A stretch of DNA of 64,000 nucleotides, taken from contig NC_042997.1 of NCBI RefSeq assembly GCF_006345805.1, positions 187,674,001 through 187,738,000 of the forward strand, written 5' to 3'. Within the stretch, counting starts at the first letter, position 1, and every line of letters starts with the position of its first letter. The position numbers and the translations under genes were made by a program. The DNA comes from Octopus sinensis. Taxonomy: Eukaryota. Under the pieces are notes generated by a model, which was given only the letters and a program-made list of their open reading frames with translations, made no database searches and was not told the DNA's origin. This document shows positions 2,775 to 59,591 of the stretch, piece by piece.

Positions 2775-3415
2775 CTGTTCTAACAGTGTCTCTACATTTG
2801 AAAACAAATTATCAGCATATTTATACAGTTTAGAAAAATATTAGCAACATTGGAATGAGAATTTAAACTATAGAGAGGATCTTGCCATAAGTTATTTAAT
2901 TGCCTATTTTGCATTTATGAATATCAGAGTTGTTTCATATGTAATCTCATTTAGAGTATCGTTATAATAACAGGGCTGTATAGTTAAAGGATTCTTCATA
3001 TACGATAAGCCAGATGTGCATTTACTAATGTTATCAAATAAATTTTTTTTATGGATTAGTGAATGATGTTTGGATTTATATTCATAAACTAAAATTTTTT
3101 TAGGTTTTCTTTAAGGGCAGTGTTCAGCAATACCTAAATCTAGAGTTATATCTAGGAAATTAACTTCATATTTATTATGATTTAAATTCATATTTACTAT
3201 GATCTTTAAATCTAATTCTTCACACATGTAGATGAACTCCTTTTCTCACGGCATCCAATGAGATCACTTGAGACCACTCATAGTTTGCAAATTAAGTAGT
3301 TCATCACCATAGTAAGGGCCAAACTACGCAGAGCAAACTCCCTTCAAAATTAAGTGTAAAATGTACAATCCTATTCACAAACCTTAACCACATCATATAA
3401 TTCCAAAATACTACA

Positions 3416-3710
3416 TCATCATCATCATTTAGCGTCCGTTTTCCATGCTAGCATGGGTTGGACGGTTCAACTGGGGTCTGGGGAGCCCGAAGGCTGCACC
3501 AGGCCAGTCAGATCTGGCAGTGTTTCTACAGCTGGATGCCCTTCCTAACGCCAACCACTCCGAGAGTGTAGTGGGTGATTTTATGTGCCACCGACACAGG
3601 TGCCAGACGAGGCTGGCGAACGGCCACGCTCGGATGGTGTTTTTATGTGCCACCGACACAGGTGCCAGACGGCCACGCTTGGATGGTGTTTTTATGTGCC
3701 ACCGACACAT
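3416..3710 (-). mobile_element. RTE-LINE 3' end fragment with internal ~60-bp tandem subrepeats
   Basis: (CAT)n tail and shared 3' UTR; tttatgtgccaccgacaca repeated three times at 3580-3710. Confidence 0.75.
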
Positions 3711-8891: not shown

Positions 8892-11647
8892 TGGTCGTGC
8901 ACATCTTTACATTTCTCCAGTCACCCCGCAAAGCCATTAAAAATCAATAGAAGTGATTTTTTAGGAATTTTCTATCCAAAACCCAATCAAAATGTCCGAA
9001 ACTTGATACGCCAATTGAATTCCAGCAAGCTGTATGTGATTGGTCGGAGATTTGGACAGTACTTGTGTGTATGTGCACGCGCATGCAGCTGTATATGTAT
9101 ACACTAGCAATATGACCCAGCGTTGCCAGGTCATAGTGCTAGTACACAATAATACTTTCACAGAAAGCAAAAAAGCTTTACTTTTCCATTATACTTTCAT
9201 TTACATTAGAATAAGTTGTAAGAACAAAATGAATGTTTTTTTTCAATTTTACATTAACCTTATCTGCAAGACAATTCACTTTATAACTACTATGACAGAG
9301 TAAATATAATGTTATCATTTCATGTTATATCATTATGTATTGATCTATGTTATGAGAGATCACCCTGGCCCAAAAACTAAAAATACTGATTAGGTATTCA
9401 TACTTAATATGATTAACAGTAATACAATTTCAAATTCAATACTATTCTATAACAATGTTAGGATTAGATTTTAAAAAATAGAATGTATTTCTTCTGAATT
9501 TGTGTTCTAATATTACCCTTTTACACACCTGCTGGTAAGCCATCACATGAAAAATATTTTATCACTAGCCAAATTTCCTTGTTCTTTCTTCAATCAGTAC
9601 ACATACACACAACACACACGTATGACAAGTAAATTAATTTTCTTTCTCCCTTCTTTTGCAGTGTTAAGAAGAACTTATTATTTTATATAAGCCACTTTGG
9701 ATCAGAAAGATTAGGACAGTGAGCAGCAGAGTACATTTATTATGGAAGTACACATATGGGAAATTTACCAAAAGAAAAAAGTTCCTAGAGGGTAGCCTCT
9801 TTCAGAATAAGAAACTATTTGTATTATTCAGTGTAAAGTTTTAAAAAGAAATTGAAATGGGATAAAACAGGAAAATTCAAAAGAGTGGCATTTACTATAG
9901 TAGTTATTAAGAGAGTACACAAAATAAAAAGATGGTTCAAAATATATATAGAGCTAATTTTTCAGGTTCCCTGAAAAGACTACTTACTTATATCAGCTGT
10001 GGACAGACAATGATTTTAAAAATAGAGAAATAGATGAAAGCTATTAATGAGATAAAATGGAACTGGAGAGATAAAGGATCCTGGATATAATGCTAAAGTT
10101 TATAGAACGGAAGAAATAGGAAGGTGCTTTTGGCAATTCTTACAACTATATTATACATGGCTTCCAGAAAAGATCATAGAAAATAACTAGCATCTCTGTT
10201 ACAAATTTCTTTTGCTCTGAGTCCCTTAACATTGCAGTGTAGTATAAACAACAATTTTTAAAAAGTTATGGTGATTATTTCAAACACTTCTAATCCATTT
10301 TTTCATTTTTAAACACACTGTTAAGAGATCCAAACACTAAGACCAAGAAATTATTTTGTTATAAATGTAATACTATTCAATATCAAAATATAAAAAGGTT
10401 GAAATTTTATAAAATAAAAAAAAAAACAGAAATAGAAAGTTAGGTCAAGAATGCCTATATAAGTACAATTTCCCAACAAGAAGTGTATTTACATTATCAC
10501 ACTTAAGTAACCTGGTTACATCAGCAAAATTAGAACAGTTCTTCTTTTTATCGTTACTATATGGTATTTATTCGGAAGGAAAGAAGTAAAGCTCATGATT
10601 TTTACAGGTCCTCTTGGGATAGTGAGGTTGATGTAGCTGATGAACAGCTTAAATTTTTGAAGGTTAATGCCTAAGGGAAAACATGATAAAAGAAGTCCCA
10701 GATAGTTGCAGTTCTAGAAATAACTGTTTGGAAAAACAGCTTTGTGCAGAGTTCATATTTGGTTGTTACAAAAAAGATATATGTGAATCGGTTGGAACAC
10801 AATTTGCAAATTTAGAAAAAAGATACTATAGCAGTAATGACAAAAGCAACACAATAAATTGGTATGTCACTAGTATTCATGTGTTATGTCAGTGAAGTAT
10901 GGCTATGTACATGTGTTACATAAATATGTTTGTGTATATGTGTGTATTGATATGAATGAAATCATATTCAAAGCTGAAGGCTATTTAATTGTAAATGATT
11001 TCATGAAATAATTAAAAGAAAAACACACACACACTCTCTCTCTCTCTCTCACTCACACACACATGGAGAGAATAAGATTTATAAGAATCTCATGAATAAT
11101 CTCAAGATTTGCTTGGTTTAAGAATCTAACTTAATTCTTGAGACTGGTAGTAAACTGAGAAATTTCTGTTATATACTTTTCTTAATGTCTTACATAAAAA
11201 AAAGAAAACAACTTATACGTTATCATCCTAACTAGAGACAAAAACAAGCTTAAATGCAGTCCAGTAAATTACTGGTATTTGTCAACCAAAAGGAGATGAA
11301 AGAAAAAGGTATCTCAAATTTGACTTCAGAACAATGACAAATTAAACTCCATATTCTAAAATAGCATGGCTTCATTGGTATGTATATGTTATGCAACATG
11401 TTACTCTAAAATAGATTTAAGATTTTACTTCAGGAATTATTTTTGAATCAACAACCCTGAAGGAAAATACTGAGATTCTAGGACTTCAGAACTTTAAATT
11501 CTTTTCATCCCATAAGCAGAATTGAAAAATTCAGAGAACTTATATTTTGACATTAAACAATTCATTGTAATTTTAATTTTCAAATGAAATGCATTTCACT
11601 ATAACTCCTAGTGCAACATGTTTTTAAAAAAGAATTTCATTTATTAC

Positions 11648-12388
11648 CTGATTGGAATCTCCAGGAGTCACTGATGATGTTTCTTGTTGTGAAAAACCAT
11701 TAATGGTACAGTTTTGGTGCTGATCACTGTCATTGCATCCAGAATCCAATTTGGAAGGAGTTGCTGCATTTGATGCATCATCCATTTGAATTTTCTTGGA
11801 GTTATCAGAACCATGCTGTACAAACAATGGTTTTTCTGCACCAGATTCCACAGATTTAGCATTCTCTCGAACTTTTATAGTTCGTGAGCGGGTCTGAATT
11901 CCTCCAGTATATCGTGGAGGCAATTTAGAGACAGGGGCATTATCAAAGTTTTCATTACTGAATTCATATGGATCATCATTTAAGTGTTGTCGTTGTTGAT
12001 TTTCTTGCTGAGACTCAGGATTTTGTTTAGTCTTTTCTTCATGCTGATGTTGATGCTGCTGCTCCTGAGGTGATAGTGTTGATGGTAATTGCAGTTGTTG
12101 CTGTTGTTCACATACTTGTTCTCCATCCACTTGATTCTGAAATGACTGTGTTGGGACTGATGAAATATCATTTACAGTTTCAATTGCACAAGTTTTCCCT
12201 GGATGTTCACCATCATCAGACTGAATGTTTGTTGTCAGATTACTGTCATTATCTTTATTTTCCAAAGAATCTTTACTTTCTAGTGGTGTAGCTTTTTCAT
12301 CTTGTGATGAAGGACATTCAGTTTGAGACAGGAGCTGCTCTGTGTTAAGAGTCCCACGATTTTCCACCACTGACTCTCCTCCATCCAT
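11648..12388 (-). CDS. First coding exon of an unidentified host gene (acidic, Q/S/N-rich, probably disordered N-terminus)
   Basis: 247 uninterrupted codons MDGGESVVEN...PGDSNQ in AT-rich surroundings. Acceptor ttttctttatttttAG at 12415-12414 (exon starts 12413) with an in-frame TAA upstream of the ATG at 12388. Phase-0 donor CAG|GTAATA at 11648/11647. Downstream exons not identified. Confidence 0.8.
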
Positions 12389-14049
12389 CACATCACTTTG
12401 AAAGCATTACACACTAAAAATAAAGAAAAGGATCAGATATAGTGATACATATAAAACTATGACATTAAAGAGTTGAAAAGCAGGCTCAACCTATGAAATA
12501 TAGCAGCATTTCTCTCTTGAATACAACATACCAACTTAAATAGAAAAGGAGATGTGTGTTTTGTGGGAATAACATAGTCCCGGACACATCCTACTTTAAA
12601 TAAAAGCAGAATAATAACTTGATTGTCTTTCATCATCAGTGTGCTGAGAACAGGATTTACCTCAACAACATTGGAGAAAGCAAAATAGCTAATGAATTCT
12701 CATTATAATTACTAAAGATGTTGGGTTTTTTTTCTAAAGCAACATTAGAAAATATGAAATTAAATAGTTTTATCCTAAACTTCTTACTTTTCTATCATTT
12801 ATAAAAAATAATACCAGTATAGAAGCCAGAAATTAAATGGTAATGGTGATGCTGATGAAAGTGACAATACAGAAAAAAATACCTTATGGAATTCATTTAG
12901 TTACATTTCCTTTGTTCTCAGTTTAATCTTCCAGAGTTAATCAAATAACTAACAGTGAAGTACTGAACTGATAATGTCATCCTTCAAAATGTGGTTTTGT
13001 GTCAATGTTAGAAATTATTACTGTTGCCAAATGGTGAGTGTAAACAAATTTCTATGCATCCTTCACACATATAAACTATCCACTTACATCTACATCATAA
13101 CTACACATTTAGTTCATTCATTCTATAAACCAACACAACTTGTATATTATAAACTGTTTAGGTAGTTTTCTTAGCTACAAGTGTAAATTGATGTAAAAAT
13201 ATAGAACCAGATTTTTATTTTCTGCTAGATGTTATTAACAACGGGTTAAGGATAAGATGCAAAATACAACACAAATAAATATATGATATAGCACTAAATT
13301 CATTAAACCAACAAGGGAGATTCATTAAAGTCACTTGATTTGCTATATACTAAAACAATAGTGAAATTTTCCTTCCAATTACATGCTACAGTCTCAAAAA
13401 AGGAAAGATAGATTAGGTAATATAGTTTCTGATATACAAAAAAAGACAAGAGGCTTAACCTGAAGGTTAAACAAAAAGAAGATAAATTTATCATCTGTTA
13501 GCTGACTTGTGAGGATTTTCCTATGCTTGCTGTGATCTAGCACAAAGCATGATCTTAACTATATCCACTTTAAACCTATATACCAGATAGTTTACTACAT
13601 AGAAATTATCATCCGTATATCTATATAAACATAGAGGTAGTGTAATTCTCTCTGTCTATCCATTCAGTTCTGCTTGCTGTTGCTACTTTTCCCAGAAGAT
13701 AGTTCATTTTTTTCCTTTCACTTTCAGCTTTCTTTTTTTTTTTGCTCTCTCTCTCTATCCTTAACTCTTTAAGTGCTACACTGGTTGGCTGTCTTCAACT
13801 TCTTTCTGTTACATTTTTATTCTCCTGGTCAAAAGACTGCTCTATATTTTTTTCTTTTTATGTTAACTCTTGTATATTCTTGTCTTGCCTTAGTCATAAG
13901 ACTATTTACATTTCTTTCTTATCCTACCTGTGTCAAAAGACCACTCACTTGTCTTTTGCTGCCCCATCTCCTTATAATTTATTCTATCATCTTGTTCTGC
14001 AGTATTTACTCCCAAATAACTTCAGAGTTGTAGCTACTGAATACTAAAC

Positions 14050-14444: not shown

Positions 14445-15094
14445 TCACAGTTGAGGGAATATGTGGAAGAATTAGACCCAGGAAGACCTGGGATGAGGTG
14501 GTGAAGCACGACCTTCGAATATTGGGCCTCACCAAGGCAATGACTAGTGACCGAGACCTTTGGAAATATACTGTGCTTGAGAAGACTCAGCAAGCTAAGT
14601 GAGACCATAACCCATGACCTATGCTAGCAGTGTAACCGGCCTACATATGCATTGCTTGCGAAGACCCGTTGAGGCAAATGAAATCACAATCAAAACCAAA
14701 TTCACTGACATGGCCAATGACAGCACTGCCTGACTGGCACCCGTGCCAGTGGAACATTAAAGGCACTATCTGAGCATGATTGTTGCCAGGACCACTGATT
14801 GGCTCCCATGCCGGTGGAATATAAAATGCACCATTCGAGTGTGATCATTACCAGCATGGCCTTACTGGCACATAAAAAATACCATTTGAGTGTGGCTGTC
14901 GCCAGTACCACCTGACTGGCCCTTGTGCCGGTGGCATGTAAGAACATCCACTACACTCTCAGAGTGGTTGGCATTAGGAGGGACATCCAGCTGTAGAAAC
15001 TCTGCCTGGTGCAGCTATCTGGCTTGCCAGTCCTCAGTCAAACCGTCCAACCCATGCCAGCATGGAAAGCGGACGTTAAACAATGATGATGATG
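14445..15094 (+). mobile_element. RTE LINE 3' end (C-terminal ORF plus 3' UTR)
   Basis: VEGICGRIRPRKTWDEVVKHDLRILGLTKAMTSDRDLWKY; ends gacgttaaacaatgatgatgatg. Confidence 0.8.
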
Positions 15095-15290
15095 AATTCA
15101 TTTATGCTTGTCTTTTCTTTTTGTCACTTTGCCCTAATAAAGTTCTTTTTGCTTTCACTTAGTTCTGTAAATTTTGTATGTTTATGTTAGGTTTCAATAT
15201 TTATACTTCATCTAGTGCATACATTTTCATGTATGTGTGTGTGTGCATGCGCATGTGTGTATGGGTGTGTATGTATATCATTACCATCAT

Positions 15291-16587
15291 ATCATCATCA
15301 TTGTTTAATGTCCACTTTCTATGCTGGCATGGGTTGGACAGTTTGACATGGAGCTGGCTAGCAGGGAGCTGTCCAGACTCCTACTGTCTGTTGCAGCATG
15401 GTTTCTATGGCTGGATGCCCTTCATAATGCCAACCACTTAACAGAGTGCACTGGGTGTTTTTTACAGCACAGGTATGTTAATGCAGCACCAGCACAAGTG
15501 CTTTTTAAGTGTCACCGGCACCTGAAAGGACAAGTCTGTATGTGTAGAAGACAGTGATTTTACTTAACTTGATGCATCTTATCAAGTACAGTAAATCACC
15601 ACATCACTCGATCCCTTGTCATTTCTTCAGTGAGGCCCAGCATCCAAAGATAATTTCTCTCCACTTCATCGCACGTCTTTCTGGATCCATCCCTTCCACA
15701 GGTACTCCCCACAATTAGAGCTCAGCACTTCTTTATGCAGCTGTCCTCATCCACAAACACCACATGACCAAATCAGTGCAGTCTTCTCTCTTGCACACAA
15801 CATCTGATGTTTCTTATACCCAGTTTTCCTCTTAAATCATTTACACTCTGCCATGCATGCACACTGACATTACTCATCCACCGAAGTATGCTAGCTTCAT
15901 TTCTTTCAAGCCTTCAGAAGTCCTCTGTAGTCAAAGCCCACATTTCACTGCCCCTGCATGTAAAATAGCTGTATGTACAAAGTCATCATACAATCTGCTT
16001 TTCAATCTCAGGGAGAGGCCCTTAGTTACCAACAAAGGTAGAAGCTCTCTGAACTTTGCCAAGCCTGTTCTTATTCTAGCAACTACACTTTCAGAACTCC
16101 TTCCCTCACTGCTAACTTGGTTTCCTAGGTAACAGAAGCTATCTATTACATCTAATGATTCACCCAAACATTTGTGGGAGCCTATTGTCTGTGTAGTTTT
16201 AGTACTCATTGTACCTGCATGTTTGCCACACACAATGACTATATTCTCTGTTAACCTTCCTTTGATACTGCTGCACCTCTTATGTGTCCAAAGCTTGCAC
16301 TGGGTACAACATATGGAGTTTCTACCAATGCCCTTCCAGCATGACCAGCTCACTTCTGTTTTCCTACTTACTAGGATTTTTGTTTTTGCCAAATGAACCC
16401 TAATGCCTTTAGATTCCAGACCTTGTTTCCACACCTGAAATTTCTTCTCTAGATCAGGTAGTGATTCAGCTATAAGAACAAGATCATCAGTGTAGAGGAG
16501 TTCACAGGGACAGCTGGTCTTGAATTCCTCTGGAGGACAAAGATAAAGAAGAAGGGGTTGAGAACTGAGCCTTGGTGGACTCCTACT

Positions 16588-16590
<3 letters not shown>
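15291..16590 (-). mobile_element. 5'-truncated RTE LINE (RT C-terminal half to tail)
   Basis: VGVHQGSVLNPF, LLYTDDL, WKQGLESKG.RV.LAKTKILVS, CTQCKLWTHKRCS, FCYLGNQVSS; (CAT)n tail at 15291. Confidence 0.9.
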
Positions 16591-16634
<44 letters not shown>

Positions 16635-16688
16635 ATTGTTCCCCTGCTGAGAATAATGTGTAGATGTAAGTACCAGTTAAGCACTGGG

Positions 16689-16935
16689 GTCATCATCATC
16701 ATCATCATCATCGTTTAACGTCCGTTTTCCACGCTAGCACGGGTTGGACGGTTTCGACCGGGGTCTGGGGAGCTCGGGACTGCCCCAGGCTCCAGTCTAG
16801 TCTGGCAGTGTTTCTACAGCTGGATGCCCTTCCTAACGCCAACCACTCCGCGAGTGTAGTGGGTGTTTTTTACGTGCCACCTGCACAGGTGCCAGAGGGG
16901 TCTGGCATCGGCCACGTTTGGATGGTGCTTTTTAT
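16689..16935 (-). mobile_element. RTE-LINE 3' end fragment
   Basis: (CAT)n plus shared 3' UTR; truncated at the G-run at 16936. Confidence 0.75.
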
Positions 16936-17173
16936 GGGGGGGGGGACAGAAATATAGGGGAGCACCAGTGGGAGGGGTGGTTCAGAGGACAGGTTCTAGG
17001 CAAGTAGAACGTAGGATATCGAGGGAGGGGTAATGCATGGTGAAATAACGTATTGAAGAGGGGGGTTCAAAGAGTAGACACCTATAATGGTGGTGGGAGA
17101 AACGACATCCGGTATAGTTGGAGCAAAATAGAGATATCCGGTATTGGTGGTGGGGGTGGGTAGGGCGGGCGCG

Positions 17174-18262
17174 CCGCGAAGAATCGGCGGCCAATTCGAT
17201 CAGCTCTGTAAGGGAGATCTTAAATATCTATAACGATAACTAATGAATTATACAGAATATGCAAAAACGAGGCGAGGCTGAAATAGTAGACAGAGTGGCG
17301 ACTAGGGGGATCAGAATAATAATAAATAATAAATAATTAGTAAACAGAGTGGCGACTAGGGGGATCAGAATAATAATAAATAATAAATAGTAAATAATAA
17401 ATAATAAATAGAGATACGGGATGAATTAAAGTTCAAAGATTTCTTATCTTGGGATCACTTCGTTTACGGACAGACTTGGCAAAAGGAATTCGAAATCAAG
17501 AATGAGGCAGGTTACTAGCTTAAGTATGCATAGCCATGGAGAGGAGTAGGAAGAGAGGAGTCCAGACAATATAAAAGAGGGGGAGAGAAGGGAAGAGAAC
17601 CCCGCGAAGAATCGGCGGCCAATTCAATCAGCTCTGTAAGGGAGATCTTAAACATCTATAACGATAACTAATGAATTATACAGAATATGCAAAAACGAGG
17701 CGAGGCTGAAATAGTAAACAGAGTGGCGACTAGGGGGATCAGAATAATAATAAATAATAAATAATTAGTAAACAGAGTGGCGACTAGGGGGATCAGAATA
17801 ATAATAAATAATAAATAATAAATAGAGATACGGGATGAATTAAAGTTCAAAGATTTCTTATCTTGGGATCACTTCGTTTACGGACAGACTTGGCAAAAGG
17901 AATTCGAAATCAAGAATGAGGCAGGTTACTAGCTTAAGTATGCATAGCCATGGAGAGGAGTAGGAAGAGAGGAGTCCAGACAATATAAAAGAGGGGGAGA
18001 GAAGGGAAGAGAACCCCGCGAAGAATCGGCGGCCAATTTGATCAGCTCTGTAAGGGAGATCTTAAACATCTATAACGATAACTAATGAATTATACAGAAT
18101 ATGCAAAAACGAGGCGAGGCTGAAATAGTAAACAGAGTGGCGACTAGGGGGATCAGAATAATAATAAATAATAAATAATTAGTAAACAGAGTGGCGACTA
18201 GGGGGATCAGAATAATAATAAATAGAGATACGGGATGAATTAAAGTTCAAAGATTTCTTATC
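17174..18262. repeat. Nested tandem array: 2.6 units of ~420 bp, each with two ~54-bp subrepeats
   Basis: ccgcgaagaatcggcggcc at 17174, 17602 and 18016; cagagtggcgactagggggatcagaataataataaa twice per unit; units nearly identical. Confidence 0.95.
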
Positions 18263-20292: not shown

Positions 20293-20305
20293 CACCCTAT
20301 ATATA

Positions 20306-21786
20306 CAGGGTGGGCCAGAATGATGGGACACATTTTAAATGCTAGTGTCTTGGATTATAAAAATGACATAGAGTACCAAATATATTTATTACATAACTGA
20401 TATACAGGAGTTCAACATATTATCTACAATTTTACTATTTTTTACATGTAGTTGGTTTTAGTAACCCTCATAATGTTGTGAACTCCAAAAGAAATTGTAT
20501 ATATGGTCAAAGCATATTTAACCAGCCAAAGATCTATTGTTGCAGCCCAAAGAAAACTCCAACAGCATTTTGGAAAGCAACAGGTACCATCTCAAAATGT
20601 GATTTTGCATACTGTTACAAACTTCCATGAGACAGACAATACTGAGAAGAAAAATCCTCAGATCAACCTTGAACATCTCATAGTGCAGAGAACTACCAAA
20701 GTGTGGGAAAAACTATTGAACGAAGTCCCTCAAAGTCCATGCATTGACTGGCTCAACAGTTCAATATTTCACAACCAGTGTTAAAAGGATTTTAAAATAA
20801 GACCAACACTTGTATCCATATAAGGTACACCTAGTACAGCAATTGCTTCTGCCAGATAAGGTGCAAAGAAAGACTTTTAGAGACTTTTTGTTTGTCAATA
20901 CGTGCAGGAAGGAAGAGGATTTTAGCCATCACTTGGTCACACCAGATGAAGCTCATTTTAACCTTTCTGATTATATTAATAAACAAACTGTAGGTTTTGG
21001 GGTTGTGAAAGTCCTCAAATTATGCACGAAAGGCCTTTGCACACTGAGAGGGTTACAGTGTGGTGTGCAGTGACTTATGAGTGGCCCTTACTTTTTTTGA
21101 GGACAAACATGGTGCAACTGTAACAGTAACTGCTGAGCACTACAACCATATGTCAAAGACTTTCTTCTTTCTTGAGCTACAAAGACTTGCCCTGACACAA
21201 ATGTGGGTGCAAGAACATGGTGTCACTAGTTATACAGTGCGACTGTCAATTACAACTCTTCAAGAACAATTCCCCAAACAACACAATTTGAGATTTGGTG
21301 ATATCCACTGGCCATCCAGATTACCGGATCTAACCCCAGTGGACTACTTTCTGTGGAGTTACCTCAAGTATAGGGTATATGCAAGAAGGCCCCACACAGC
21401 AGCGAAACAAAAACAAAGCATCTGTAGAGGGATTGCAGCCATTTCAGTTGATATGCTAAGCTGCAGTGTGCTTGATATGAGAAGGTGAGCTTGTGAATGT
21501 TCTTTTCATGGTGGTGACCACTTCCAGATCATCATCATCATCGTTTAACATCCGTTCTCCATGATAGCATGGGTTGGATGGTTCAACCGGGGATCTGGGA
21601 AGCCAGAAGGCTGCACCAGGCTCCAGTCTGATCTGGCAGTGTTTCTACAGATGCACTATTCAAATCTTAGATAATATGTTAAACTTCTGTAAATTAAGTT
21701 ATGTAATAAATTTGGTACTCTATGTCATTTTTATAATCCAAGATACTAAGCATTTAAAATGTGTCCCATCATTATGGCCCACTCTA
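20306..21786 (+). mobile_element. Tc1/mariner element with ~100-bp TIRs and decayed transposase (DD41D-like spacing)
   Basis: TA-cagggtgggccagaatgatgggacacatttt / matching right end; fragments YPYKVHLVQQL, TPDEAHFNL, WPSRLPDLTPVDYFLWSYLK; 41 residues between the second catalytic position (here H) and the third D; RTE 3' fragment inserted at ~21530-21650. Confidence 0.85.
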
Positions 21787-24125
21787 TATATGTTTTGCCC
21801 AACAACCATCCCCAACAAAAAAAAATATATCTATGATTCTAATAGACATTTCTTTCTTCTAATTCAAGAAATGATTGTCTCATTTCCACTCATTTCCTTG
21901 ACACTGATAAACAAATATAGCATACAGTAAAGATAATGCAAGCAGGTTAGTTCAGCGGTAGACTTATGAAAATGTAGCTGTTACTATTTGATATAGTAAC
22001 TAATTCTCCACATTTAGAATACTAGGATACACTCTAAAGCAGGGGTTCACAAACAAAGGTGTGTGTGTGTGTGTACTCCTTCAGGGGTGTGTGAGATTTG
22101 TGAAAACACTGGAATTTGAAGTAATCACAATCACCAATGGTACATTCTTAAATTTACTAAACAGTGTTAATAATTTTTTCTTTTTAGTTTTCAAATATGA
22201 TGTTTGAAAGTATAAATTAACAGCAAACTATACATTGTCTGTTTTATGGTATCCATAAAATGGTATCCACTTATTGTCTGTTCCATGATACTCAATTTTT
22301 TCACAATATATTTCACATAAGACATGTGCCAACACTGGAAGAAAAATTTGAGAATAGCTACTCAAGAGGAAATCAATTTAATTGATAACAAAACAAGCTG
22401 AGTCAATCCATGCCTTATTCCAAAGTTGTATAGTATCATTTAGAAAGAACCAGAGAAATTAAAGGGCAAAAGGAAGAACAAAATCTCATGAATTGTAAAC
22501 AAGAAGTCCTTAGAACATGATACTCGACTGAACCCAGAGCTGTTTAACAAGTCTGTTAAAATAAGGACTTAAAAGTGAAATATTTTGCATTCCAACCAAA
22601 AGAACATAAGGTTCTTAAAATGGAAATTTCCCGATGGTAGGCCTCTGAAGGAGACAAACAATTGTAAAATTTATATGCAAAGAAATTAAATATTTAATCT
22701 AAGTTTTGAAAATTCAACTATTAACTTGAACAGTAATACATTTCTGAATGTTTATAGTGTTTTGATTTTACCAGGAAAAGAAAGTTGCTAAAGAAAATTA
22801 AAATAAGTATCATTTAATACATTCAGTTGAAATAAAAAGAGAATTTCTTCTGCTACTAGTTTAATGGCACTGAACTAAATATATTACACTAGCTAAATAT
22901 AATACATTAGAAATATATTACATTAAGTGTTAAGCATGAGCTTCAATAAAGAGGAGTGACAGATAAGTTCTAAACAAATATTTATTAACTGGTACAAGAT
23001 CTAAAACTGGCTGTTGTAAATGTCTAGGCCAGTTTGTTTTGCTACTACAAAATAGAGGTTGACAAAACAGCTGGCTTCCTAATCTTGACCTGCTACTGGT
23101 CAAATTAGTTTGACAGTTTTATCACTGAAGAACTTCTTAGTAGGTCAGTAGGGTGATGTGCTGCTGCCTTTCTAACAACCCTTTCCTAACTCCTCCAACA
23201 TACACCTACACACACAATAAATATATTATCTTCTGTTGTACCACAGAGTGGGTATTAATCTTGTGTGTTTGTTATTGCTTAGTCCCAAGTCAACCCCGCT
23301 TGAGTAGATCTACAGTGAAAAGTACTCCTGCCCTGACCACCCCATTTTTTATGTACATCAGGAGCTACAGTGTACAAACTGTCCTTTCTTTTTTTAAGAC
23401 AGCAGAATTTAAGGGAGATCTGAATTGTTTCTAGCAGGTCAAGAGACCAGATAGAGGCTCTCTCTTAATCTTATGTAAACGGCAATAGTAATAAATAGTT
23501 TAAAAATAGAAATTTTAAAGGATGATTTGATAAAAAGACAAGATAAAAAATATATACAAGTTTGTAAAGACACTTCGCTGCTCAACCTGCTAGAAATAGC
23601 AGCTAAACTTCACTTAAAACCTACCATAAGTAAGGAAAAACACATTAGATAATGTAATTGTGCATATTCCTAAAAAGATGTGTTTGTTGAATAAACTTAA
23701 TGAAATTACTATCAATATCAGTCAAGAACTGGAATTGATTTAACCAATTATCTCCTCAATAGGATTTTAGGCCAATCATTATTTCTATTCATTACAGATA
23801 TTATACAATGAAACAATCTGTAAGATTCAGTGGAGTGTGTGTGGAATCAATGAAGTAAGAATGTTTCTGGACAATCTTATTGCAGATGACAGTTGTGTTG
23901 ATATGTATATGACTGAAAAAAGAAAGAAAGAAAAATCCCTTCTATCTCATTAAGTAAATGAAACTATAAATATTTTAATAACTAATAATTTCAAGAATGA
24001 AACAGACACTGATCAACATATCAATTGAACCAAAGAGGCTTAGATCTTCAGTACAATGCTGTCTCAACTGAGCTAATTTCAGCTAGCCTCATAATTTTAT
24101 AAACTGTCATTAAAATGATATTTTG

Positions 24126-30450: not shown

Positions 30451-30734
<284 letters not shown>

Positions 30735-39532: not shown

Positions 39533-39985
39533 TTGAAGTCCGAAATATTACACACACGCGCGCGCGCGCAGGCAGGCACGCACGCACGCACGCACGCACG
39601 TACGTACGTACGTACGTACATACATACATACATACATACATACATACATACATACATACATACATACATACATACATACATACATACATACATACATGCA
39701 TGCATACATACATACATACATACATACATACATACATACATGCATGCATACATACATACACACACACACCCATCCATCCATACATCATACAGGCAGGCAA
39801 GCACGCACGCACGTACGTACATACATACATACATACATACATACATACATCATACATACATACATACATACATACATACATGCATGCATACATACATACA
39901 TACATACACACACCCACCCATCCATCCATACATCATACATACATACATACATACATACATAGACACACACACATCCATACATACA

Positions 39986-40021
<36 letters not shown>

Positions 40022-40110
40022 CACACACACACACATACACACATACATACATACTACATACATACATACATACATACATACATACATACATACATACATA
40101 CATACATACA
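39533..40110. repeat. Compound microsatellite (CACG/CGTA/CATA/CA)
   Basis: About 580 bp of tetra- and dinucleotide repeats with a duplicated higher-order block. Confidence 0.95.
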
Positions 40111-41565
40111 TGTAAGTAAGTATATATTGGAATTGGTTTGATGCTTTTACAGGATATTTCATGCCGTATAATTGTCAATCGTTTCGCTGTATTATTGTAT
40201 CGTATCGGATCATAGACATAACAGCAAAGTGATTTGGATGTGTTGAAAGTCTTTCGAACGGGATGCTTTTGCCGAATCTTCGGACTATTATAGATTATCC
40301 ATCTGAGAAGGAAAAAAAATCACATTTAATATTCCTACTTTTACCAATCGACTGTTTCTGAATTCAGTAACAGCGGTTACGCTGATAAGAATATGTCAAT
40401 CAGATTATGCAGGTTCGCTATACAGGCGGCGAATTGGTAGAGTCGTTAAAGCGTCGGGGGAGATGCTTTGCAATATTTGCCTCGGCTCTTTACGTTCTTA
40501 GTTCAAATCTTGCCATGGCCTACATGAGTGGTAGACATAATTCGCTGCTCGGTTCAAAACCACCACTTGGCCCTTGAATATCCTCTCTATCGCAAACGTT
40601 CGAACAAAGTCACTAATTTCAGGAGACCTCCCTACCTCCCGTCTTGCCTCTCACTAGTCTCATAGGCGGTGTTAAAAAAAAATTACAAACTACTCAGATG
40701 TTTCCACAAAGATGGGAAATGCACAAAAGGGCGCTGAGAAAGGCCTGGCTGAAAATTATTTTAAAACGAAATAACACCAGAAACGAAAGGAAATTGTTCA
40801 TAGGCAATGAGTACCTAAGGTAGGGTGGTGGATCTGGGTGAACATCCACATGATAACTCACAGCGTAAAAAACTTATTATATGTAGATCTTGTTGGGTGC
40901 CTCTCGAATTGAAATCTTTCAAATTCATCTTTCCTGCACGTGAAAGCAAGTGTCTATTAAATAAAATTCTGACGTGTTGGCCCAGATCAATAAGGATACA
41001 GAAATGAAGCTGTATCTGAGAAATTGTTATAAATAAATAATTTCTTTTGAGTTCCGTGGTGTTTTTGTATTTCAGCCACTTTCCGATCACATGGCGGGAA
41101 GTCACTGAGATATAAATATTCTCTTAGGTAGTACCTCAGCCTACCGCAAGAAACATTCCCAGGGGATTGGATACTTCATTTTTGATAGCCAAGACACCTT
41201 AAGAATGGAAGATTTTCATGTTGTTGCGAGGATTAGCATGAAAACCTGAGTTTTGAACCCTAGCTCTCAGGTTTTCTCGTCTCAGAATCACGACCTACTG
41301 TATCAGCATAAAAGGAAGAGTGTCGCCACAAAAGGCATTAACGCTTACGTCACTATAGTTCGATCAACCAGCGCTGGCTGACTTACTATGGTTGATGCGG
41401 TGAAGCTCAAAGAAAGTGCGCGAGTTTTCCCAGCAAAACAGTTTTGCCGAATGTTCTGGAAAATGTGGCTTATGGTCATAAAAAGCTGGCTAATTCAAAT
41501 TCATATTAGAGTCACTCAGCCGTCTAGACAAATCTGTGTAACTTTTCTCAGCGAGTTAGTCTCTC

Positions 41566-41619
<54 letters not shown>

Positions 41620-41923
41620 CACACACACACACACACTCACTCACTCACCCTCTTTTTCGTATTTAACAAGCTTATGTTGTATTCGACAAAGGGCACCAAC
41701 TTAAAGTTGGTGTCGAATAATGCACTTTCATTATATACAGTGATTTAAATACCTTCTACTCTATTTCGTCTTCCATGGTTATGTCCTATTTTCATATTAT
41801 TTAGCATGTTGAAATACAGAAGACTACCAGCTGATATGTTCGCTACTTCATGAAGGTTGTTCTATTAATTTACTTGAATGTATAAATGTAAATATAAACG
41901 ATGCAGGTTAATAAACTATTTGA

Positions 41924-43028
41924 AAACTCAAATATATATTAGTTTGGTCATTCTTAACTTCACACGCAACCTAACAAATATTGTGAACCACTATATGACT
42001 AATCATCACACTAAAACGCCAACAGGGTATTTGAACTTAAGCAGTCGAACATCATATTTAACCGGCAGTCGGACATCTCACTTTTATATGTGACTGTATT
42101 CTCGAATGGAAACTAGAGTGTGAACTTAGCTTCCCCAACCTCTGCTTTGGTATTCTGCTCTAGTGTCTAAACAAAATGAAATCTTCGCTGTGCCGGGACA
42201 GCTCAAATGCATTGGGTATCATATGGATCAGATACGAAAGGCAAGTGTGGATTGTCGAGACCTTATCTTTTGCTCTAAGATACTTGATTTCTATAGAAAT
42301 ATTGCTGTATAGTTTCTCTAGTTTCTAATGCTCAGTTACAGCAATGTTGTATATTGAGACACTTGTATTTTTGGTATTTTAGCAACTACAATTAGCAGGC
42401 TCTTGCTTATCTGTCTAACACCAAACATACGGTGCTGGTGTCTCTTTTCTCAAAGTACTTTCCCTTTTGGTTATCTGATCCATATGATACCCAATGCATT
42501 TGAGCTGTCCCGGCACAGCGAAGATTTCAATTTGTTTAGACACTAGAGCAGAATACCAAAGCAGAGGTTGGGGAAGCTAAGTTCACACTCTAGTTTCCAT
42601 TCGAGAATACAGTCACATATAAAAGTGAGATGTCCGACTGCCGGTTAAATATGATGTTCGACTGCTTAAGTTCAAATACCCTGTTGGCGTTTTAGTGTGA
42701 TGATTAGTCATATAGTGGTTCACAATATTTGTTAGGTTGCGTGTGAAGTTAAGAATGACCAAACTAATATATATTTGAGTTTGAAGAATTGGCAAGGAAG
42801 CATAACCAAAAGGGAAAGTACTTTGAGAAAAGAGACACCAGCACCGTATGTTTGGTGTTAGACAGATAAGCAAGAACCTGCTAATTGTAGTTGCTAAAAT
42901 ACCAAAAATACAAGTGTCTCAATATACAACATTGCTGTAACTGAGCAATAGAAACTAGAGAAACTATACAGCAATATTTCTATAGAAATCAAGTATCTTA
43001 GAGCAAAAGATAAGGTCTCGACAATCCA
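41924..43028. repeat. Interleaved inverted duplication A-B-A'-B'
   Basis: A 41924-42234 / A' 42472-42782 (311 bp, 1 mismatch seen); B 42248-42474 / B' 42802-43028 (227 bp, 2 mismatches seen). Confidence 0.95.
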
Positions 43029-43572
43029 AGACCGCGAAACAGTTTCAACCTCTAGTTAAAGTCATCTCACTTTTGTCGTTAATGCTTTTGGGAAAATCAT
43101 GGACATCACATTACACTAGTGACTAGTGTAAAAGAGACCAATATATTCAAACTACTTTAGATCTAATGCTAAATCTCAAGTTTATCGTGCCGTCAATAAT
43201 AAAGTGTGTCAGTCGGAAAATAAAAGACGAAGTTAAATATACTAAACAAAGTACATCAAGGGAAGAGTACGTTGGCACAGACCAACTTACGTTCATCTCA
43301 CTACAATTTGGACAGTGTACGTACAAATTACCACCCTAAATATTTTAAACATCCTCGTTTCTTTTCACTCCCGACCTCATAATATATATACTTATGTTTT
43401 GGAAGAAACAATACACTAAATTTAGGCAAAACTTCGCATGACAGGCAATTTGCATTAAGCAACGTTGCTTCAGTGAAGGATGAACTCGAGTAGGGCAACG
43501 GCCAATCTAGCAGCCAAACTAAATCCAGACTGATCTAAGTACGAAGGTATAGGCGCGCGCACGAACACACGA

Positions 43573-43618
<46 letters not shown>

Positions 43619-44471
43619 CTATTTATACTGATAGTACATGCGTACTTAATTTCGTTTTTCTTTACAAGTGTCTGGAACAGCATTACCTCATGTTTCATAT
43701 ATATATATATATGGTGGTTCTTTAAAACGCCTACAATTAGTGATTTTAACGCATAATTCACAGGTCAGTGGAGGTGAGCTGTTTGATATCATAAACACAT
43801 ACACCTTGAACATTCTTTGGCTTCGTGATGATTTTATATGGGAAGATTTAAATAATTTTCATTGCACTTAGAGCAATAAAAAGAGTATGTAACACACATT
43901 GTATAAATACAATATATATCTCACACTGAGAAAATAAGATATTATCACACTCTTTTCAGCATATGCAAGCATTGAATATACATTAATTTTTGACTGAACA
44001 AACACCAAAATACATGAACATTAAAACATTCTTCAGGGAAAACCCTAGGTACAATATCGAGAAAATTAAAACAAATAGATACATACATTTTGCATTTTAA
44101 AATACAGAGTTCCGAGATATGAGTGAAATTATCATACGTATCGAAATTAGTGAAAATAACAAAATTCTTTGTTCATAGTTCATCATTTAAGAATATAGGA
44201 ATATAGGAAGAATATATAATAAAAACGAAAGATTACAAACAGAAGGTACTTATTGTGTCTGCCAAAAGTTATAGCACATATACTCACATTTCCAATTGTG
44301 CTGCATGTAAGAAGGAAGACTACTCTTCACAGCGTTTTAGAATCTATTGTATATTTTGCTTTCTGACATGACAGCACAAAATTATAACAAATATATGTTT
44401 AAGTTTCAAGACTTGAGAATAGCCTTAAACATCTTAGTATCGCTAGACATTATAGAGCCGTATGTATAAAT

Positions 44472-48129: not shown

Positions 48130-48439
48130 TATGAATAATTAAAACGGCCATTAAAATATAGGATTCATGTTATACGTTGTGGGAATGATGATACTTGTTA
48201 ATTTAAATTGGTATTCTGTTATTAAATTAAATTAGCTTCTGTGAGTGCTATTCTTTTATTTCCCATAACTTTTTTTTTTAAATTAAAATGGATTTTAGTG
48301 GGGAAAATGTTTAATTAGGTGTGAAAGTATGAAAATATTAATCTAGTGTAGTCACAGGGAAATATGAAAAATCATTAACAAAAACTTTTAAATTCGAACA
48401 CAGCTGTCTTCTATATATATGTGCGTGAGTGTGTGTGTG

Positions 48440-49321
48440 TGTGGTCTGGTCAATAATTATCCAGACTGTTGCTATAGTAACGAAACACGGAAAGTTAAGC
48501 CGCTTGGCACAGATTGACCTTGAACGCTGCTGTGCATACACACCAAGTTTTAACGTTCTAGGTCACTTCAGTTGTTTACAACTGTGCTTGGAAGGAATAT
48601 GTGTAACGTGTGACCGTCGCATTGACCATGACAGAGGAAGTTGGGCAGAGAATTTGCATCAAATTTTGCCAAAAGCTTGCGATACCTGCACAGGAGTCTA
48701 CGCAAAGTTTTCAAAAAATTTTCATCGTTCTCAACACAATCAAGAAAATCTTGTGCAATTGAAACCCGAGTGTCTTTTTGGTCAGCTGAAAGCAGTTTTG
48801 GTACAAAATTGGCAGATACGCGTCTCATACCCAAATCTTCAGTGATTATGGACTAAACCGAACCGTAATATGCATATCCTCTGATAACTTACGAATGGTG
48901 ATTCGACGATTTTCCCACACAGCCGTACGCACATCTGCGATGTTTTTCTCAGTTTGCTGGTTGTGGGTTTCCCAGAACGTTCGTCAACATCGACATTTTT
49001 TTCGGTCATCATGAAAACGTCTGAACCACTCGTACACTTGTGTGTGGCTCATACACTCCTCTCCATACACTTTCTGCAACTTTGCATAGGCCTCTGAGCA
49101 GGTATCGCCAAGACAACTTTATCTGTCATGGGCAATGCGACGATCACACGCTACACACTTTCCTTCCAAGCACTGCTGTAAACAGCGGAAGTTAGCTAGA
49201 ACGTTAAAACTTAGTGCGCATGCACAGTAAAGTTCAAGGTCAATCTGTGCCAAGCGGCTTCACTATGCTTGCTTTAGCTTCGTTACTATGGCAACAGTCC
49301 GGACACATTGATCAGACCTCG
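48440..49321. mobile_element. Head-to-head fusion of two mariner left ends
   Basis: Plus arm: TIR, 5' UTR and MTEEVGQRICIKFCQK; minus arm: TIR, 5' UTR and HTH region to NFLKTL; CAAAGTT overlap at 48703-48709. Confidence 0.8.
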
Positions 49322-49332
49322 TATACACACAT

Positions 49333-53681: not shown

Positions 53682-54825
53682 TTGAGTCATCCCATAAATA
53701 ATGCAGTTTTTTCAATTGTATGAACTAAATGTCGAAGTGGGGCGGGATAAACTACCTGCACCAACTTGCTGTAAAAGCAGGTAATAATTTTACTTTGCAC
53801 TTATTCTTAGTGCAAGTTTTGAAGATTTTAATAGCTATATTTTCAAATGGAAGTGACAAATCTATAATGGAAGTGACAAAGGAGCATATTCAGCATACTT
53901 TATGAGTAATAACGCCACGGGGAATATTAATTCAATATATAGGAATCGGACAATAAGCGTAAGCCAGTGCCAACGGTGGTTCCAGAAATTCCGAACCGGA
54001 AATTACAGCCTAAAAGGTGAGAGGCCTGAGAGCTCGACGAGGATGTCCTGCAAATCCCGGTGGAACAAAATCTCATTATAACTGCTAAGGAACTAACAGA
54101 GAAGCTTGGATTTGGTCATTTAACCATTCATCGACACCTGCGTGTCATTGGAAAAGTCAACAAACTGGGTCAATGGGTTCCTCGCAAACTTTCCGAGTTT
54201 AATCGCGCGCAGAGAGTGAATGTATGCTCTTTTTTGCTGTCACGTCTCACGAATGAACCTTTTTGGGACCGTACAGTGACCGGTGATGAGAAATGGATTT
54301 TCAATAAAAATGTCAAGCGCCGAAGACGGTGGGTAGGGAAAGGAGAAACACCGGTACCCCAGGCTAAAGAAGGTCTTCACCCACGTAAAGTGTTGTTATC
54401 TGTTTGGTGGGATATGAAAGGTTTAGTCAACTTTGAACTTTTAAACCCAAACCAAATGATAACAAAGAAGATCTACTGCGAGCAGCTTGAGCGGCTTATG
54501 TCAGTGCTAGAAGAAAAACGACCATCTTTGGTTTCAAGACGAAAGGTGTTCTTCCATCAGGATAATGCTCGGCCACATACAGCGAGGATGACATTCCAAA
54601 GGTTGGAGCAGTTTGAATGGGTAATGATGCCCCACTCACCATATTCGCCAGACAATTGCCCCATCTGATTATCATTTATTCCGCAGTCTTCAAAATCATT
54701 CGGACGGGGAAAAATATGAATTCTGTAGACGAGGTCAGATCAGTACTGCAGGAACATTTTTCGTCATGGACGAGTGAATTTTGGATGTCTACCAGATAAA
54801 CCGCATTATTTATGGGATGACCCTA
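53682..54825 (+). mobile_element. Mariner (DD34D, Mos1-like) with TIRs and frameshifted transposase
   Basis: TA-ttgagtcatcccataaataatgc / gcattatttatgggatgacccta TIRs; WVPRKL, TGDEKW, HQDNARPH, YSPD then frameshift to APSDYHLF. Confidence 0.92.
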
Positions 54826-57968: not shown

Positions 57969-58619
57969 ATTGGGAAGAACTGTTTCCATAGTAACCAAAG
58001 ATGCTGTGCATGCGCACAAGGAGGAGAAGGAGATACGAGAAAGATAATTTATTTCATAAAATCCTAGTTTAATGTTTTGACATGCTGATTCCCCACTACC
58101 CACTGATGATGGAAGAGGCAGCGAACGTGCTATTTTCTGATTGGCTGAAAATTCTGAAAATTATCAACTTTGAATACCTGTAACATTTTTGCAAAAACTT
58201 TCTAGAATAAATGAATAACAAATTCGGATTCAGCGTCAAAAATTACATCTATATGATACATTAAAATTTTTTAAAGATAATTGTAAACAGTGATGAAAAC
58301 CACAAATATCCTAAGTTTCCTTTGCCTAAGACAAATCGCTACAACAATTATGCTAGTAAGTATATTTCACTATTTTTCAGTCTTGTAGATGATTACTTGG
58401 TGAGAGATTACATCAATCTCAGAATTACTTTCTGGCCTCCACTGTAACTCACATCTCGCTAGATAACGGCTTTTGTGTGCTGTAAGGTTTTATGTTCAGG
58501 TAATCTATCAAATATCCTCCTCCATTTCTGCTCTGTAGCTCAACCTTAAATAGATAACATGATGGACTATGGCTTTTGCATTTGTGAGCCCGCTGTATAA
58601 CAGAAAAGCTTACAAGGTA

Positions 58620-59591
58620 TAATGTTCGTCCTTCGGTTCGAAGATGACCAACTGACATCATCTGATGGAACTGGCGCCATGAGACCGGAGGTGGCTGGTG
58701 AGGCCAATCCGGGCAAGGAAGCCCCTCCCACAGGTGGGGCAGAAGTGGGTAGGGGCCGTGCTACTGGTGCAGGCGGCTCTGGCTTTACGCATCTGACGTT
58801 TCTGCTCCGCTGACCGAATCCGTCCCTCCTCGGCTGTCCCTGCTCCCACGGTGATTGCGCTGCGCCAGGATGAGCGGTTGGCAGCAAGTGTCTCCCAGGT
58901 CTCTGTTCCGATGGAGAAGTCTTTGAGAGAGACCTTGAGACTATCCTTGTAGCGCTTCTTCTGCCCTCCGACTTTGCGCCTGCCCTGGCCGAGTTCACCG
59001 TAGAAGAGCTGTTTTGGGATGCGAGTGTCGGACATGCGGGAGACGTGGCCCGCCCATCTCAGCTGGGCCTTGCGCACGATTGTGATGGTGCTAGGGAGAT
59101 CTGCCTGCTTCAGAACTTCCGTGTCTGGGACTTTGTCCTGCCAGCGGATGTGAAGGAGGTTCCGAAGACACCTGAGATGGAAGTGGTTTATCTGGCGCTC
59201 GTGCCTTCGGTAAGCAGTCCACGTCTCGCAGCCGTATAGTAGGGTGGTAAGCACGACTGCCCGGTAGACTTTCAGCTTGGTGTTGAGGCTGATTCCTCTC
59301 CGCTCCCAGACTCCCAAACGCGCTGCTTGCCTTGGAGATTCTGTTGATGGTTTCAGCATCTATGTTGGCATTGGAGGAGAGAGTGCTGCCCAGGTAGGTG
59401 AAGTTTTCCACCACTCGTAGGATCCGTCCGTTCACCCTTATCTGAGGCTCATGGTATTGCAATCGATGAGCAGGAGATGCAGCTCGAGATGAACAGGTTC
59501 TCATCAGCCTGTGACAACTTCGGTCTCACCATCAGTGCCAAGAAAACCGAAGTGATGTTTCAGCCAGCTCCCGGCAAACAATACCATGAGC
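58620..59591 (-). mobile_element. 5'-truncated, 5'-inverted RTE (BovB-like) LINE insertion with 13-bp TSD
   Basis: FTYLGSTLS, LNTKLKVYRAVVLTTLLYGCETW, QLRWAGHV, CPTCGRGFLARIGLTSHLRSH; inverted piece on plus at 59462-59591; TSD agcttacaaggta at 58607-58619 and 59589-59601. Confidence 0.92.

What the first reader, a model, noticed from the sequence alone, without database searches (positions are those of the whole stretch)
41924..43028. Locus containing an inverted copy of itself inserted at its own midpoint (A-B-A'-B')
Seen: 311-bp and 227-bp inverted pairs are interleaved, not nested, with only ~3 mismatches. The B|A' join is seamless (3-nt tat overlap), while A|B and A'|B' carry 13-nt (cgaaaggcaagtg) and 19-nt (gaagaattggcaaggaagc) fillers that share ggcaag. 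Inference: the ancestral allele was A-B', and a ~535-bp reverse-complement copy spanning the break was inserted between them. This matches a four-point template switch in order 3-1-4-2 or end-joining with templated insertion, at an unusually long scale. It could form alternative cruciforms or a giant pseudoknot-like RNA.
Basis: partly seen in the sequence, partly recalled or inferred. Interest (0 to 1): 0.75.

Follow-up and report, generated by a model that had tools for sequence, protein, structure and literature searches.

The report
Inverted self-copy inserted into own locus
A 535-base stretch of non-coding octopus DNA carries a back-to-front copy of itself inserted at its own middle; this is most likely the scar of one DNA copying or repair accident, not a working genetic element.

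Summary
A (41924-42234) pairs with A' (42472-42782) with 1 mismatch in 311. B (42248-42474) pairs with B' (42802-43028) with 2 mismatches in 227. The two pairs are interleaved. B+A' is one seamless 535-bp reverse complement of A joined to B'. The window is octopod DNA, repeat-rich and non-coding at this site. The 535-bp unit occurs nowhere else in the 64 kb and has no meaningful ORF, Pfam or Rfam content. The fillers have no detectable template, and their shared GGCAAG is not significant (p about 0.1). The best explanation is a one-off replicative or repair template switch (MMBIR or Pol-theta style). It resembles the "3-1-4-2" template-switch class, but it is longer, has fillers, and returns 3 nt early. 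I found no orthologous or allelic DNA, so the polarity rests on parsimony alone and an assembly artefact is not excluded. The topology is self-erasing, like an engineered FLEx switch. Interest is low to moderate: it is a clean example of a known kind of mutation.

The parts
41924..42234 (+). A: original left half of the 535-bp unit, as inferred. It ends in ATA (42232-42234), the left copy of the 3-bp duplication.
   Evidence: 311 nt, 1 mismatch to the reverse complement of 42472-42782.
42235..42247 (+). Filler f1, 13 nt, CGAAAGGCAAGTG, at the first switch junction.
   Evidence: No template in the window. Weak, non-significant resemblance to the bases that followed A in the empty site (p about 0.06).
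42248..42782 (-). Inserted inverted copy (B + A'): a gap-free 535-bp reverse complement of A joined to B'. It contains the intact empty-site junction GGATCAGATAACCAAAAGGG on the minus strand at about 42462-42481.
   Evidence: BLASTN of the reverse complement aligns 1-311 to A and 309-535 to B', with 3 substitutions and no indels.
42783..42801 (+). Filler f2, 19 nt, GAAGAATTGGCAAGGAAGC, at the return junction.
   Evidence: Unique in the window even with 3 mismatches allowed. No local template.
42802..43028 (+). B': original right half of the unit, as inferred. It begins with ATA (42802-42804), the right copy of the 3-bp duplication.
   Evidence: 227 nt, 2 mismatches to the reverse complement of 42248-42474.
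41560..41647 (.). Context: (TC)n(CA)n(CTCA)n microsatellite about 280 bp upstream. It could form non-B DNA and act as a fork-stalling site (inference only).
   Evidence: families D1-D3.
43552..43620 (.). Context: (CA)n microsatellite about 520 bp downstream.
   Evidence: family D1.

Best explanation
This is the scar of a single DNA-synthesis accident in unique, non-coding octopus DNA. The original locus read x-A-B'-y. A 3' end that stopped or broke at the A|B' point (...GGATCAGATA) left its template. After about 13 nt of untidy synthesis it re-primed on the complementary strand of an intact copy (sister chromatid, homologue, or the other arm of the same fork), about 225 nt downstream at the end of B'. 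It then copied 535 nt backwards, through B' and A, to the start of A. It left that template, added 19 more untemplated or untraceable bases, and rejoined the original template 3 nt before the point where it had left. The product is A-f1-[B-A']-f2-B' with an ATA duplication. In mechanistic terms this is a two-switch replicative event of the FoSTeS/MMBIR kind, or equivalently a break repaired by synthesis on an inverted template with Pol-theta-like filler at both joints. Shown: the anatomy, the seamless inner junction, the 3-bp duplication, the fillers, the near-identity, and the lack of any coding, RNA-family or repeat-family content. Inferred: the polarity, the enzyme pathway, and that it is germline and real. 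It probably has no function. Its consequences are structural. It is a strong hairpin- or cruciform-forming site. It is also a metastable arrangement: recombination through either repeat pair turns the other pair into direct repeats, and deletion between those restores the original sequence.
For: The interleaved near-perfect pairs and the gap-free 535-bp inverted copy are. The insert is flanked by ATA on both sides. The unit is single-copy in 64 kb, and no other inverted pair exceeds 90% identity, which argues against a repeat family. There are no ORFs with Pfam content, and no Rfam or tRNA hits. Three substitutions with no indels in 538 bp fit either a young event or low-fidelity synthesis: at an assumed error rate of 2.4e-3 per base (Pol theta figure recalled from memory, not checked here), 1.3 errors are expected and P(3 or more) = 0.14. 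The four-point template-switch literature describes the same topology, with two inverted repeats created when the copied fragment spans both switch points (PMC5453318). Events up to 318 bp are reported in human haplotypes. Microsatellites able to form non-B DNA lie on both sides.
Against: No empty allele or orthologue was obtained, so polarity and reality rest on parsimony. No microhomology is visible at either switch, because the fillers hide the joints. The fillers have no detectable template, whereas classic Pol-theta fillers are usually traceable to nearby sequence. The return point precedes the departure point by 3 nt, an order not seen among clean short template switches. Read support for the assembly cannot be checked.
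Confidence: 0.55

Rival explanations
1. Capture of a free double-stranded fragment. A 535-bp piece cut out of the sister chromatid or homologue (breaks at the start of A and the end of B') was ligated in inverted orientation into a staggered break at A|B' by end joining, and the fillers were added at both joints. No long-range synthesis is involved.
For: Fillers at both joints and a small target duplication are typical of end-joining capture of DNA fragments (background knowledge on NUMT and T-DNA-type insertions). The fillers are untraceable. The 3-bp ATA duplication fits a staggered break that was filled in.
Against: It needs three breaks within 535 bp on two molecules, and a fragment that happens to span the recipient break. 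A copying mechanism explains that proximity for free. The 3 substitutions would need either a diverged homologue as donor or later mutation.
Confidence: 0.15
2. Assembly or library artefact. A chimeric molecule or read with two strand switches (for example amplification-type inverted chimeras, or long-read fold-back errors) was built into the consensus.
For: Read support cannot be inspected here. Inverted chimeras that restart a few hundred bases away on the other strand are a known amplification artefact (background knowledge). No second source of this species was found in any collection.
Against: It needs two precise switches in the consensus, with a return to within 3 nt of the departure point. 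The fillers and the three substitutions without any indel are not what a single noisy chimeric read polished by normal reads would leave. Common fold-back artefacts give S-S' palindromes, not an interleaved order.
Confidence: 0.15
3. Two-step history. A first event produced A-B'-f1'-A'-f2-B': an inverted copy of A followed by a re-copied B', which is a fold-back with return. Homologous recombination between A and A' then flipped the segment between them to give the present order.
For: One search shows that the isomers interconvert by inversion through either repeat pair, so the present isomer need not be the one first formed.
Against: It adds one more event than the direct model for the same data, and no trace distinguishes the two.
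Confidence: 0.08
4. A mobile element with long inverted repeats: a foldback or MITE-like element, or a non-autonomous DIRS-like element with terminal and internal complementary regions.
For: There are long inverted repeats in a transposon-rich genome, with mariner and LINE remnants in the window.
Against: There is no second copy in 64 kb. No target-site duplication flanks the A..A' unit, the B..B' unit or the whole structure. There are no ORFs for reverse transcriptase, tyrosine recombinase or transposase. The inner 535 bp is exactly the outer two halves joined, which an element architecture does not predict.
Confidence: 0.03

Closest known systems
Four-point template-switch mutation, type 3-1-4-2 (Loytynoja & Goldman 2017, PMC5453318)
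   Same: [quoted passage not shown] This creates two interleaved inverted repeats in one event.
   Different: Here the copied fragment is 535 nt. The events in that paper are tens of nt, and the longest human case reported later is 318 bp. The spacer is zero or negative: the return is 3 nt before the departure, an order not observed there. Fillers of 13 and 19 nt sit at the joints, which the model does not include.
FoSTeS/MMBIR complex rearrangements, including inverted duplications and DUP-TRP/INV-DUP
   Same: Serial template switches to an inverted template, and short insertions of unclear origin at the joints. Error-prone synthesis could account for the 3 substitutions.
   Different: Those events are typically kilobases to megabases and are usually recognised by junction microhomology. 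DUP-TRP/INV-DUP has a triplicated segment and is mediated by pre-existing inverted repeats. Here each half is present exactly twice, and no prior repeat is evident.
Polymerase-theta-mediated end joining / SD-MMEJ templated insertions
   Same: An insertion at a break is copied from the break's own flanks, possibly in inverted orientation, with composite fillers.
   Different: Typical templated inserts are a few to a few tens of nt and can be traced to nearby sequence. Here the templated part is 535 nt, and the short fillers are the part that cannot be traced.
FLEx / DIO engineered recombination switch (topology only)
   Same: Two pairs of inverted sites are interleaved. Inversion through one pair makes the other pair direct, which allows excision (verified on the sequence).
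   Different: The engineered switch uses short heterotypic recombinase sites and carries a cargo. Here the 'sites' are 311-bp and 227-bp homologies, there is no cargo, and there is no evidence of any recombinase or regulation. The end state is simple reversion to the empty site.

Membership tests
Four-point template-switch mutation (type 3-1-4-2) | The middle fragment is a reverse-complement copy of nearby reference sequence. | tested here: met
   535-bp gap-free reverse complement of A+B', 3 substitutions.
Four-point template-switch mutation (type 3-1-4-2) | The copied 2->3 fragment spans both points 1 and 4, giving two inverted repeats. | tested here: met
   the copy covers positions 1-535, and the departure/return point is at 309-311.
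Four-point template-switch mutation (type 3-1-4-2) | Point 4 does not precede point 1, so no re-opening of newly made duplex is needed. | tested here: not met
   ATA is present on both sides of the insert, so the return is 3 nt before the departure. states that such orders were not observed.
Four-point template-switch mutation (type 3-1-4-2) | The three fragments abut directly, and the event is fully explained by the reference. | tested here: not met
   The 13-nt and 19-nt fillers have no template.
Four-point template-switch mutation (type 3-1-4-2) | An ancestral (reference) allele is available to polarise the event. | not testable with these tools
   No allelic or orthologous DNA could be reached.
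MMBIR / FoSTeS | Microhomology of 2-15 nt at the template-switch joints. | tested here: inconclusive
   The joints are occupied by fillers. The only nearby candidate is TGGAT, which starts 13 nt before the end of A and is complementary to the last 5 nt of B'. That is at chance level (by eye).
MMBIR / FoSTeS | Two or more switches, with copied segments from nearby sequence in either orientation. | tested here: met
   Two switches and an inverted 535-bp copy taken from within 311 bp of the breakpoint.
Pol-theta end joining with templated insertion | Filler can be traced to sequence close to the break, direct or inverted. | tested here: not met
   This applies to the short fillers: local alignments do not beat shuffles (p 0.5-1.0), and there is no match with 3 or fewer mismatches in 64 kb. 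The 535-bp part is traceable but is far longer than typical.
Foldback / MITE-type transposon | Terminal inverted repeats bounded by a target-site duplication. | tested here: not met
   the flanks of the A..A' unit, the B..B' unit and the whole unit share no duplication. Only the inner 567-bp insert is flanked by ATA, and that insert has no terminal inverted repeats.
Foldback / MITE-type transposon | Multiple dispersed copies. | tested here: inconclusive
   There is none in the 64-kb window. The rest of the genome is not available.
DIRS-like retroelement | Reverse transcriptase and tyrosine recombinase genes between inverted terminal repeats, plus an internal complementary region. | tested here: not met
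   The longest ORF in the region is 86 aa and is created by the repeat itself. No protein hit was found.
DUP-TRP/INV-DUP | An inverted triplicated segment flanked by duplications, mediated by pre-existing inverted repeats. | tested here: not met
   Each half is present exactly twice. The unit has no earlier inverted repeat.

The most novel reading that the evidence does not exclude
The interleaved repeat pairs could work as a natural, homology-driven FLEx-like flip-and-erase switch, or as a source of long hairpin RNA (a substrate for ADAR editing or for small-RNA production in a cephalopod). In that case the arrangement would be maintained rather than being a passing scar.
Probability: 0.03. 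Interest if true: 0.6.

Novelty: new member of a known kind. Interest (0 to 1): 0.25.

Why it matters
If real, this is an unusually clean, half-kilobase example of a template-switch insertion whose source spans its own insertion point. It sits in the size gap between the short template switches catalogued in primates (tens of bp, maximum about 318 bp) and the kilobase-to-megabase FoSTeS/MMBIR rearrangements of human genetics, and it comes from a mollusc. It shows how one event can create a 311-bp and a 227-bp perfect hairpin de novo. Such hairpins are raw material for fragile sites or hairpin RNAs. The interleaved topology also carries its own route back to the ancestral sequence. As a single non-coding locus with no sign of function, it is mainly useful as a search template for a genome-wide count of such events.

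Tried and rejected
(1) Finding the empty allele or an orthologue.
- Exact look-up of 10 local ORFs, including the predicted empty-site ORF, found nothing.
- A six-frame query of the reconstructed empty site plus flanks against 5.8 billion proteins gave no hit even at E <= 10.
- A scan of metagenome contigs for the 20-mer empty-site junction gave one locus, L001. It is a 22-nt chance match in 45.5% GC DNA with no homology to the locus beyond those 22 nt.
- The O. bimaculoides protein P0001 is not on record with DNA.
- The Logan contigs for P0002 are 1.3-1.9 kb and lie 30 kb from the locus.

(2) Tracing the fillers. K-mer, mismatch-tolerant and Smith-Waterman searches of the window all stayed at chance level.

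(3) Repeat-family or transposon reading. Rejected on single-copy status, the absence of target duplications and the absence of ORFs.

(4) RNA gene reading. No Rfam match was found beyond a meaningless 18-bit SCARNA7 hit inside the upstream microsatellite.

(5) A second interleaved pair at 14462-16936. This turned out to be dispersed SINE-family copies at 71-75% identity, not the same phenomenon.

(6) Snap-back synthesis on both broken ends. This would give A-A'-B-B' (adjacent pairs), not the interleaved order, so I rejected it by reasoning.

Full report
**What is there.**
I read 41700-43300 directly and searched 41000-44000 for repeats. Two inverted pairs were reported: 41924-42234 with 42472-42782 (311 nt), and 42248-42474 with 42802-43028 (227 nt). 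A base-by-base comparison gives one mismatch in the first pair and two in the second, all substitutions, with no indels. BLASTN E-values are 2e-161 and 4e-114.

The order along the plus strand is A, a 13-nt filler (CGAAAGGCAAGTG), B, A', a 19-nt filler (GAAGAATTGGCAAGGAAGC), then B'. B and A' overlap by 3 nt. Together they form a gap-free 535-bp reverse complement of A joined to B'.

One detail was missed. The trinucleotide ATA ends A (42232-42234) and also begins B' (42802-42804), but it occurs only once at the matching place in the inverted copy. The 567-bp insert (filler, copy, filler) is thus flanked by a 3-bp duplication.

**Where it sits.**
The window is 36% GC and full of microsatellites and dispersed repeats. 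It holds a mariner transposase remnant (Pfam Transposase_1, 7e-23) and ORFs that read like LINE remnants.

A 255-aa ORF at 11624-12391 (minus strand) is 84% identical to an uncharacterised Octopus bimaculoides protein. It is 75% identical to a protein from Logan contigs of another sample. Those contigs align to the window at 84% nucleotide identity over 1.8 kb, flanks included. The window is therefore from an octopod other than O. bimaculoides.

The focal locus lies in unique sequence between a (TC)n(CA)n tract at 41560-41647 and a (CA)n tract at 43552-43620.
- The 535-bp unit has no other copy in the 64 kb.
- Its two pairs are the only inverted repeats above 90% identity in the window.
- It contains no ORF longer than 86 aa, and that one is created by the repeat itself.
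- It has no tRNA and no Rfam match. The only listed hit is an 18-bit score against a 65-bit threshold, inside the upstream microsatellite.

**Polarity.**
Of the three internal junctions, only B|A' is seamless. If A-B' was the original sequence, one insertion of one contiguous inverted copy explains the whole structure. The alternatives need two or more events with coincident endpoints: the middle being original with A and B' added on either side, or A..A' being an older inverted-repeat element.

- Exact look-up of ten local ORFs, including the ORF predicted for the empty site, found nothing.
- A six-frame query of the reconstructed empty site with its flanks against 5.8 billion proteins gave no hit even at E <= 10.
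- A scan of metagenome contigs for the 20-mer junction gave one 22-nt chance match in DNA with no other similarity to the locus.
- Look-ups of the two related proteins gave either no record or short contigs 30 kb away.

**The joints.**
I looked for a template for the two fillers.
- No k-mer longer than 9 nt recurs within 6 kb, which is what chance predicts.
- f2 has no match in the window with up to 3 mismatches.
- f1 has only chance-level matches with up to 2 mismatches.
- Local alignments of either filler to the reconstructed locus, on both strands, do not beat shuffled fillers (p 0.5-1.0).
- The resemblance of f1 to the bases that would have followed A (ACCAAAAGGGAAAGT) has p of about 0.06. 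That is suggestive of a few sloppy bases copied before the switch, no more.

No microhomology can be read at either switch, because the fillers occupy the joints.

**Mechanism.**
A 3' end at the A|B' point must have acquired, as its continuation, the sequence of the opposite strand, starting about 225 nt ahead and running back 535 nt, and must then have rejoined its own path. That is a two-switch template-switch event.

In the four-point notation of Loytynoja and Goldman this is the rare 3-1-4-2 class, in which the copied fragment spans both switch points and two inverted repeats are created (PMC5453318). It departs from that class in three ways.
- It is 535 nt long. The events there are tens of nt, and the longest later reported in human haplotypes is 318 bp.
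- It carries fillers at both joints.
- The return point precedes the departure point by 3 nt, an order those authors did not find in real data.

These features fit a break-repair or fork-restart process with low-fidelity steps better than a clean intra-fork slip. Candidates are MMBIR/FoSTeS, or synthesis on an inverted template finished by Pol-theta-type end joining. The three substitutions could be age. They could also be errors of the copying polymerase: at an assumed 2.4e-3 errors per base (Pol theta figure recalled from memory, not checked here), 1.3 are expected and P(3 or more) = 0.14. The event therefore cannot be dated from them.

Snap-back synthesis on the two broken ends would give adjacent pairs (A-A'-B-B'), so I reject it. 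End-joining capture of a free 535-bp fragment is possible but needs three breaks on two molecules.

**Consequences.**
Folded as a single DNA strand, the 1105 nt adopt the A:A' hairpin (-436 kcal/mol), with B in the loop and B' unpaired. The B:B' alternative excludes it.

I checked the topology on the sequence. Inversion by recombination between A and A' turns B and B' into direct repeats 570 bp apart. Inversion between B and B' does the same for A and A'. Deletion between the direct repeats then regenerates the reconstructed empty site, with 0 or 1 difference. The arrangement is thus the natural equivalent of an engineered FLEx switch with no cargo, and it carries its own path to precise reversion. 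This fits a young and probably transient structure. I found no evidence of function.

**Artefact.**
I cannot inspect reads. An artefact would need two strand switches in the consensus with a return to within 3 nt, plus fillers and three substitutions without indels. The usual long-read fold-back errors give plain palindromes, not an interleaved order. I rate an artefact at about 0.15.

**Comparison and verdict.**
The locus works like a template-switch or templated-insertion mutation and is best filed as a long, untidy member of that kind. It fails two defining features of the strict four-point class and the traceable-filler feature of Pol-theta insertions. It also fails the tests for foldback/MITE elements, DIRS-like elements and DUP-TRP/INV-DUP.

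A second interleaved pair at 14462-16936 is only 71-75% identical and is built from dispersed SINE-family copies, so it is not the same thing.

Interest is low to moderate. The finding is a single non-coding mutational scar of a known type, and it remains unverified against reads or relatives.

Noticed in passing
window 2295-2777: An imperfect palindrome (78% self-complementary over about 500 nt) that contains a tRNA-Lys(CTT)-like sequence at 2644-2726 (Rfam 33.7 bits; ARAGORN). It is probably two tRNA-derived SINEs head to head.
   Followed up: partly
window 17174-18224: A tandem duplication: period 414 bp, 2.5 copies, 97% matches. A 54-bp unit is itself doubled inside each copy.
   Followed up: no
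window 54060-54668 (+) and 48571-48852 (-): Mariner-type transposase remnants. The first hits Pfam Transposase_1 at 7e-23. The second reads like the N-terminal DNA-binding part; that judgement is from memory. An 81% inverted pair at 48430-48643 / 49114-49331 overlaps the second one.
   Followed up: partly
window 20301-20432 and 21662-21791: An 88% inverted pair flanks the 135-aa ORF at 21081-21488. This looks like a decayed element of about 1.5 kb with terminal inverted repeats, but the ORF has no Pfam hit.
   Followed up: no
window 14462-16936: A second pair of interleaved inverted repeats, only 71-75% identical. At least the larger pair (14871-15095 / 16699-16936) belongs to the dispersed repeat family also found at about 1090-1313 and 3414-3650. 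This is a chance arrangement, not a self-copy.
   Followed up: yes
window 11624-12391 (-): A 255-aa glutamine-rich ORF, 84% identical to O. bimaculoides A0A0L8HFB7 and 75% identical to a Logan protein. It is the only likely genuine exon seen, and it identifies the window as octopod. The Logan contig L002 aligns at 84% nucleotide identity over 11502-13284.
   Followed up: partly
window 39601-40111 and 30588-30700: Very long microsatellites: (TACA) x 128 and (TA) x 57.
   Followed up: no
window 58567-59504 (-): A GC-rich island (46% GC against 36% overall) with overlapping ORFs of 137-233 aa. They read like the C-terminal part of a LINE reverse transcriptase, judged from memory. The 233-aa ORF has no Pfam hit.
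   Followed up: no
L001 1174-1195: The empty-site junction 20-mer has an exact 22-nt match in a 79-kb metagenome contig (Ga0209498_1000028, 45.5% GC). There is no similarity beyond those 22 nt, so it is a chance hit.
   Followed up: yes
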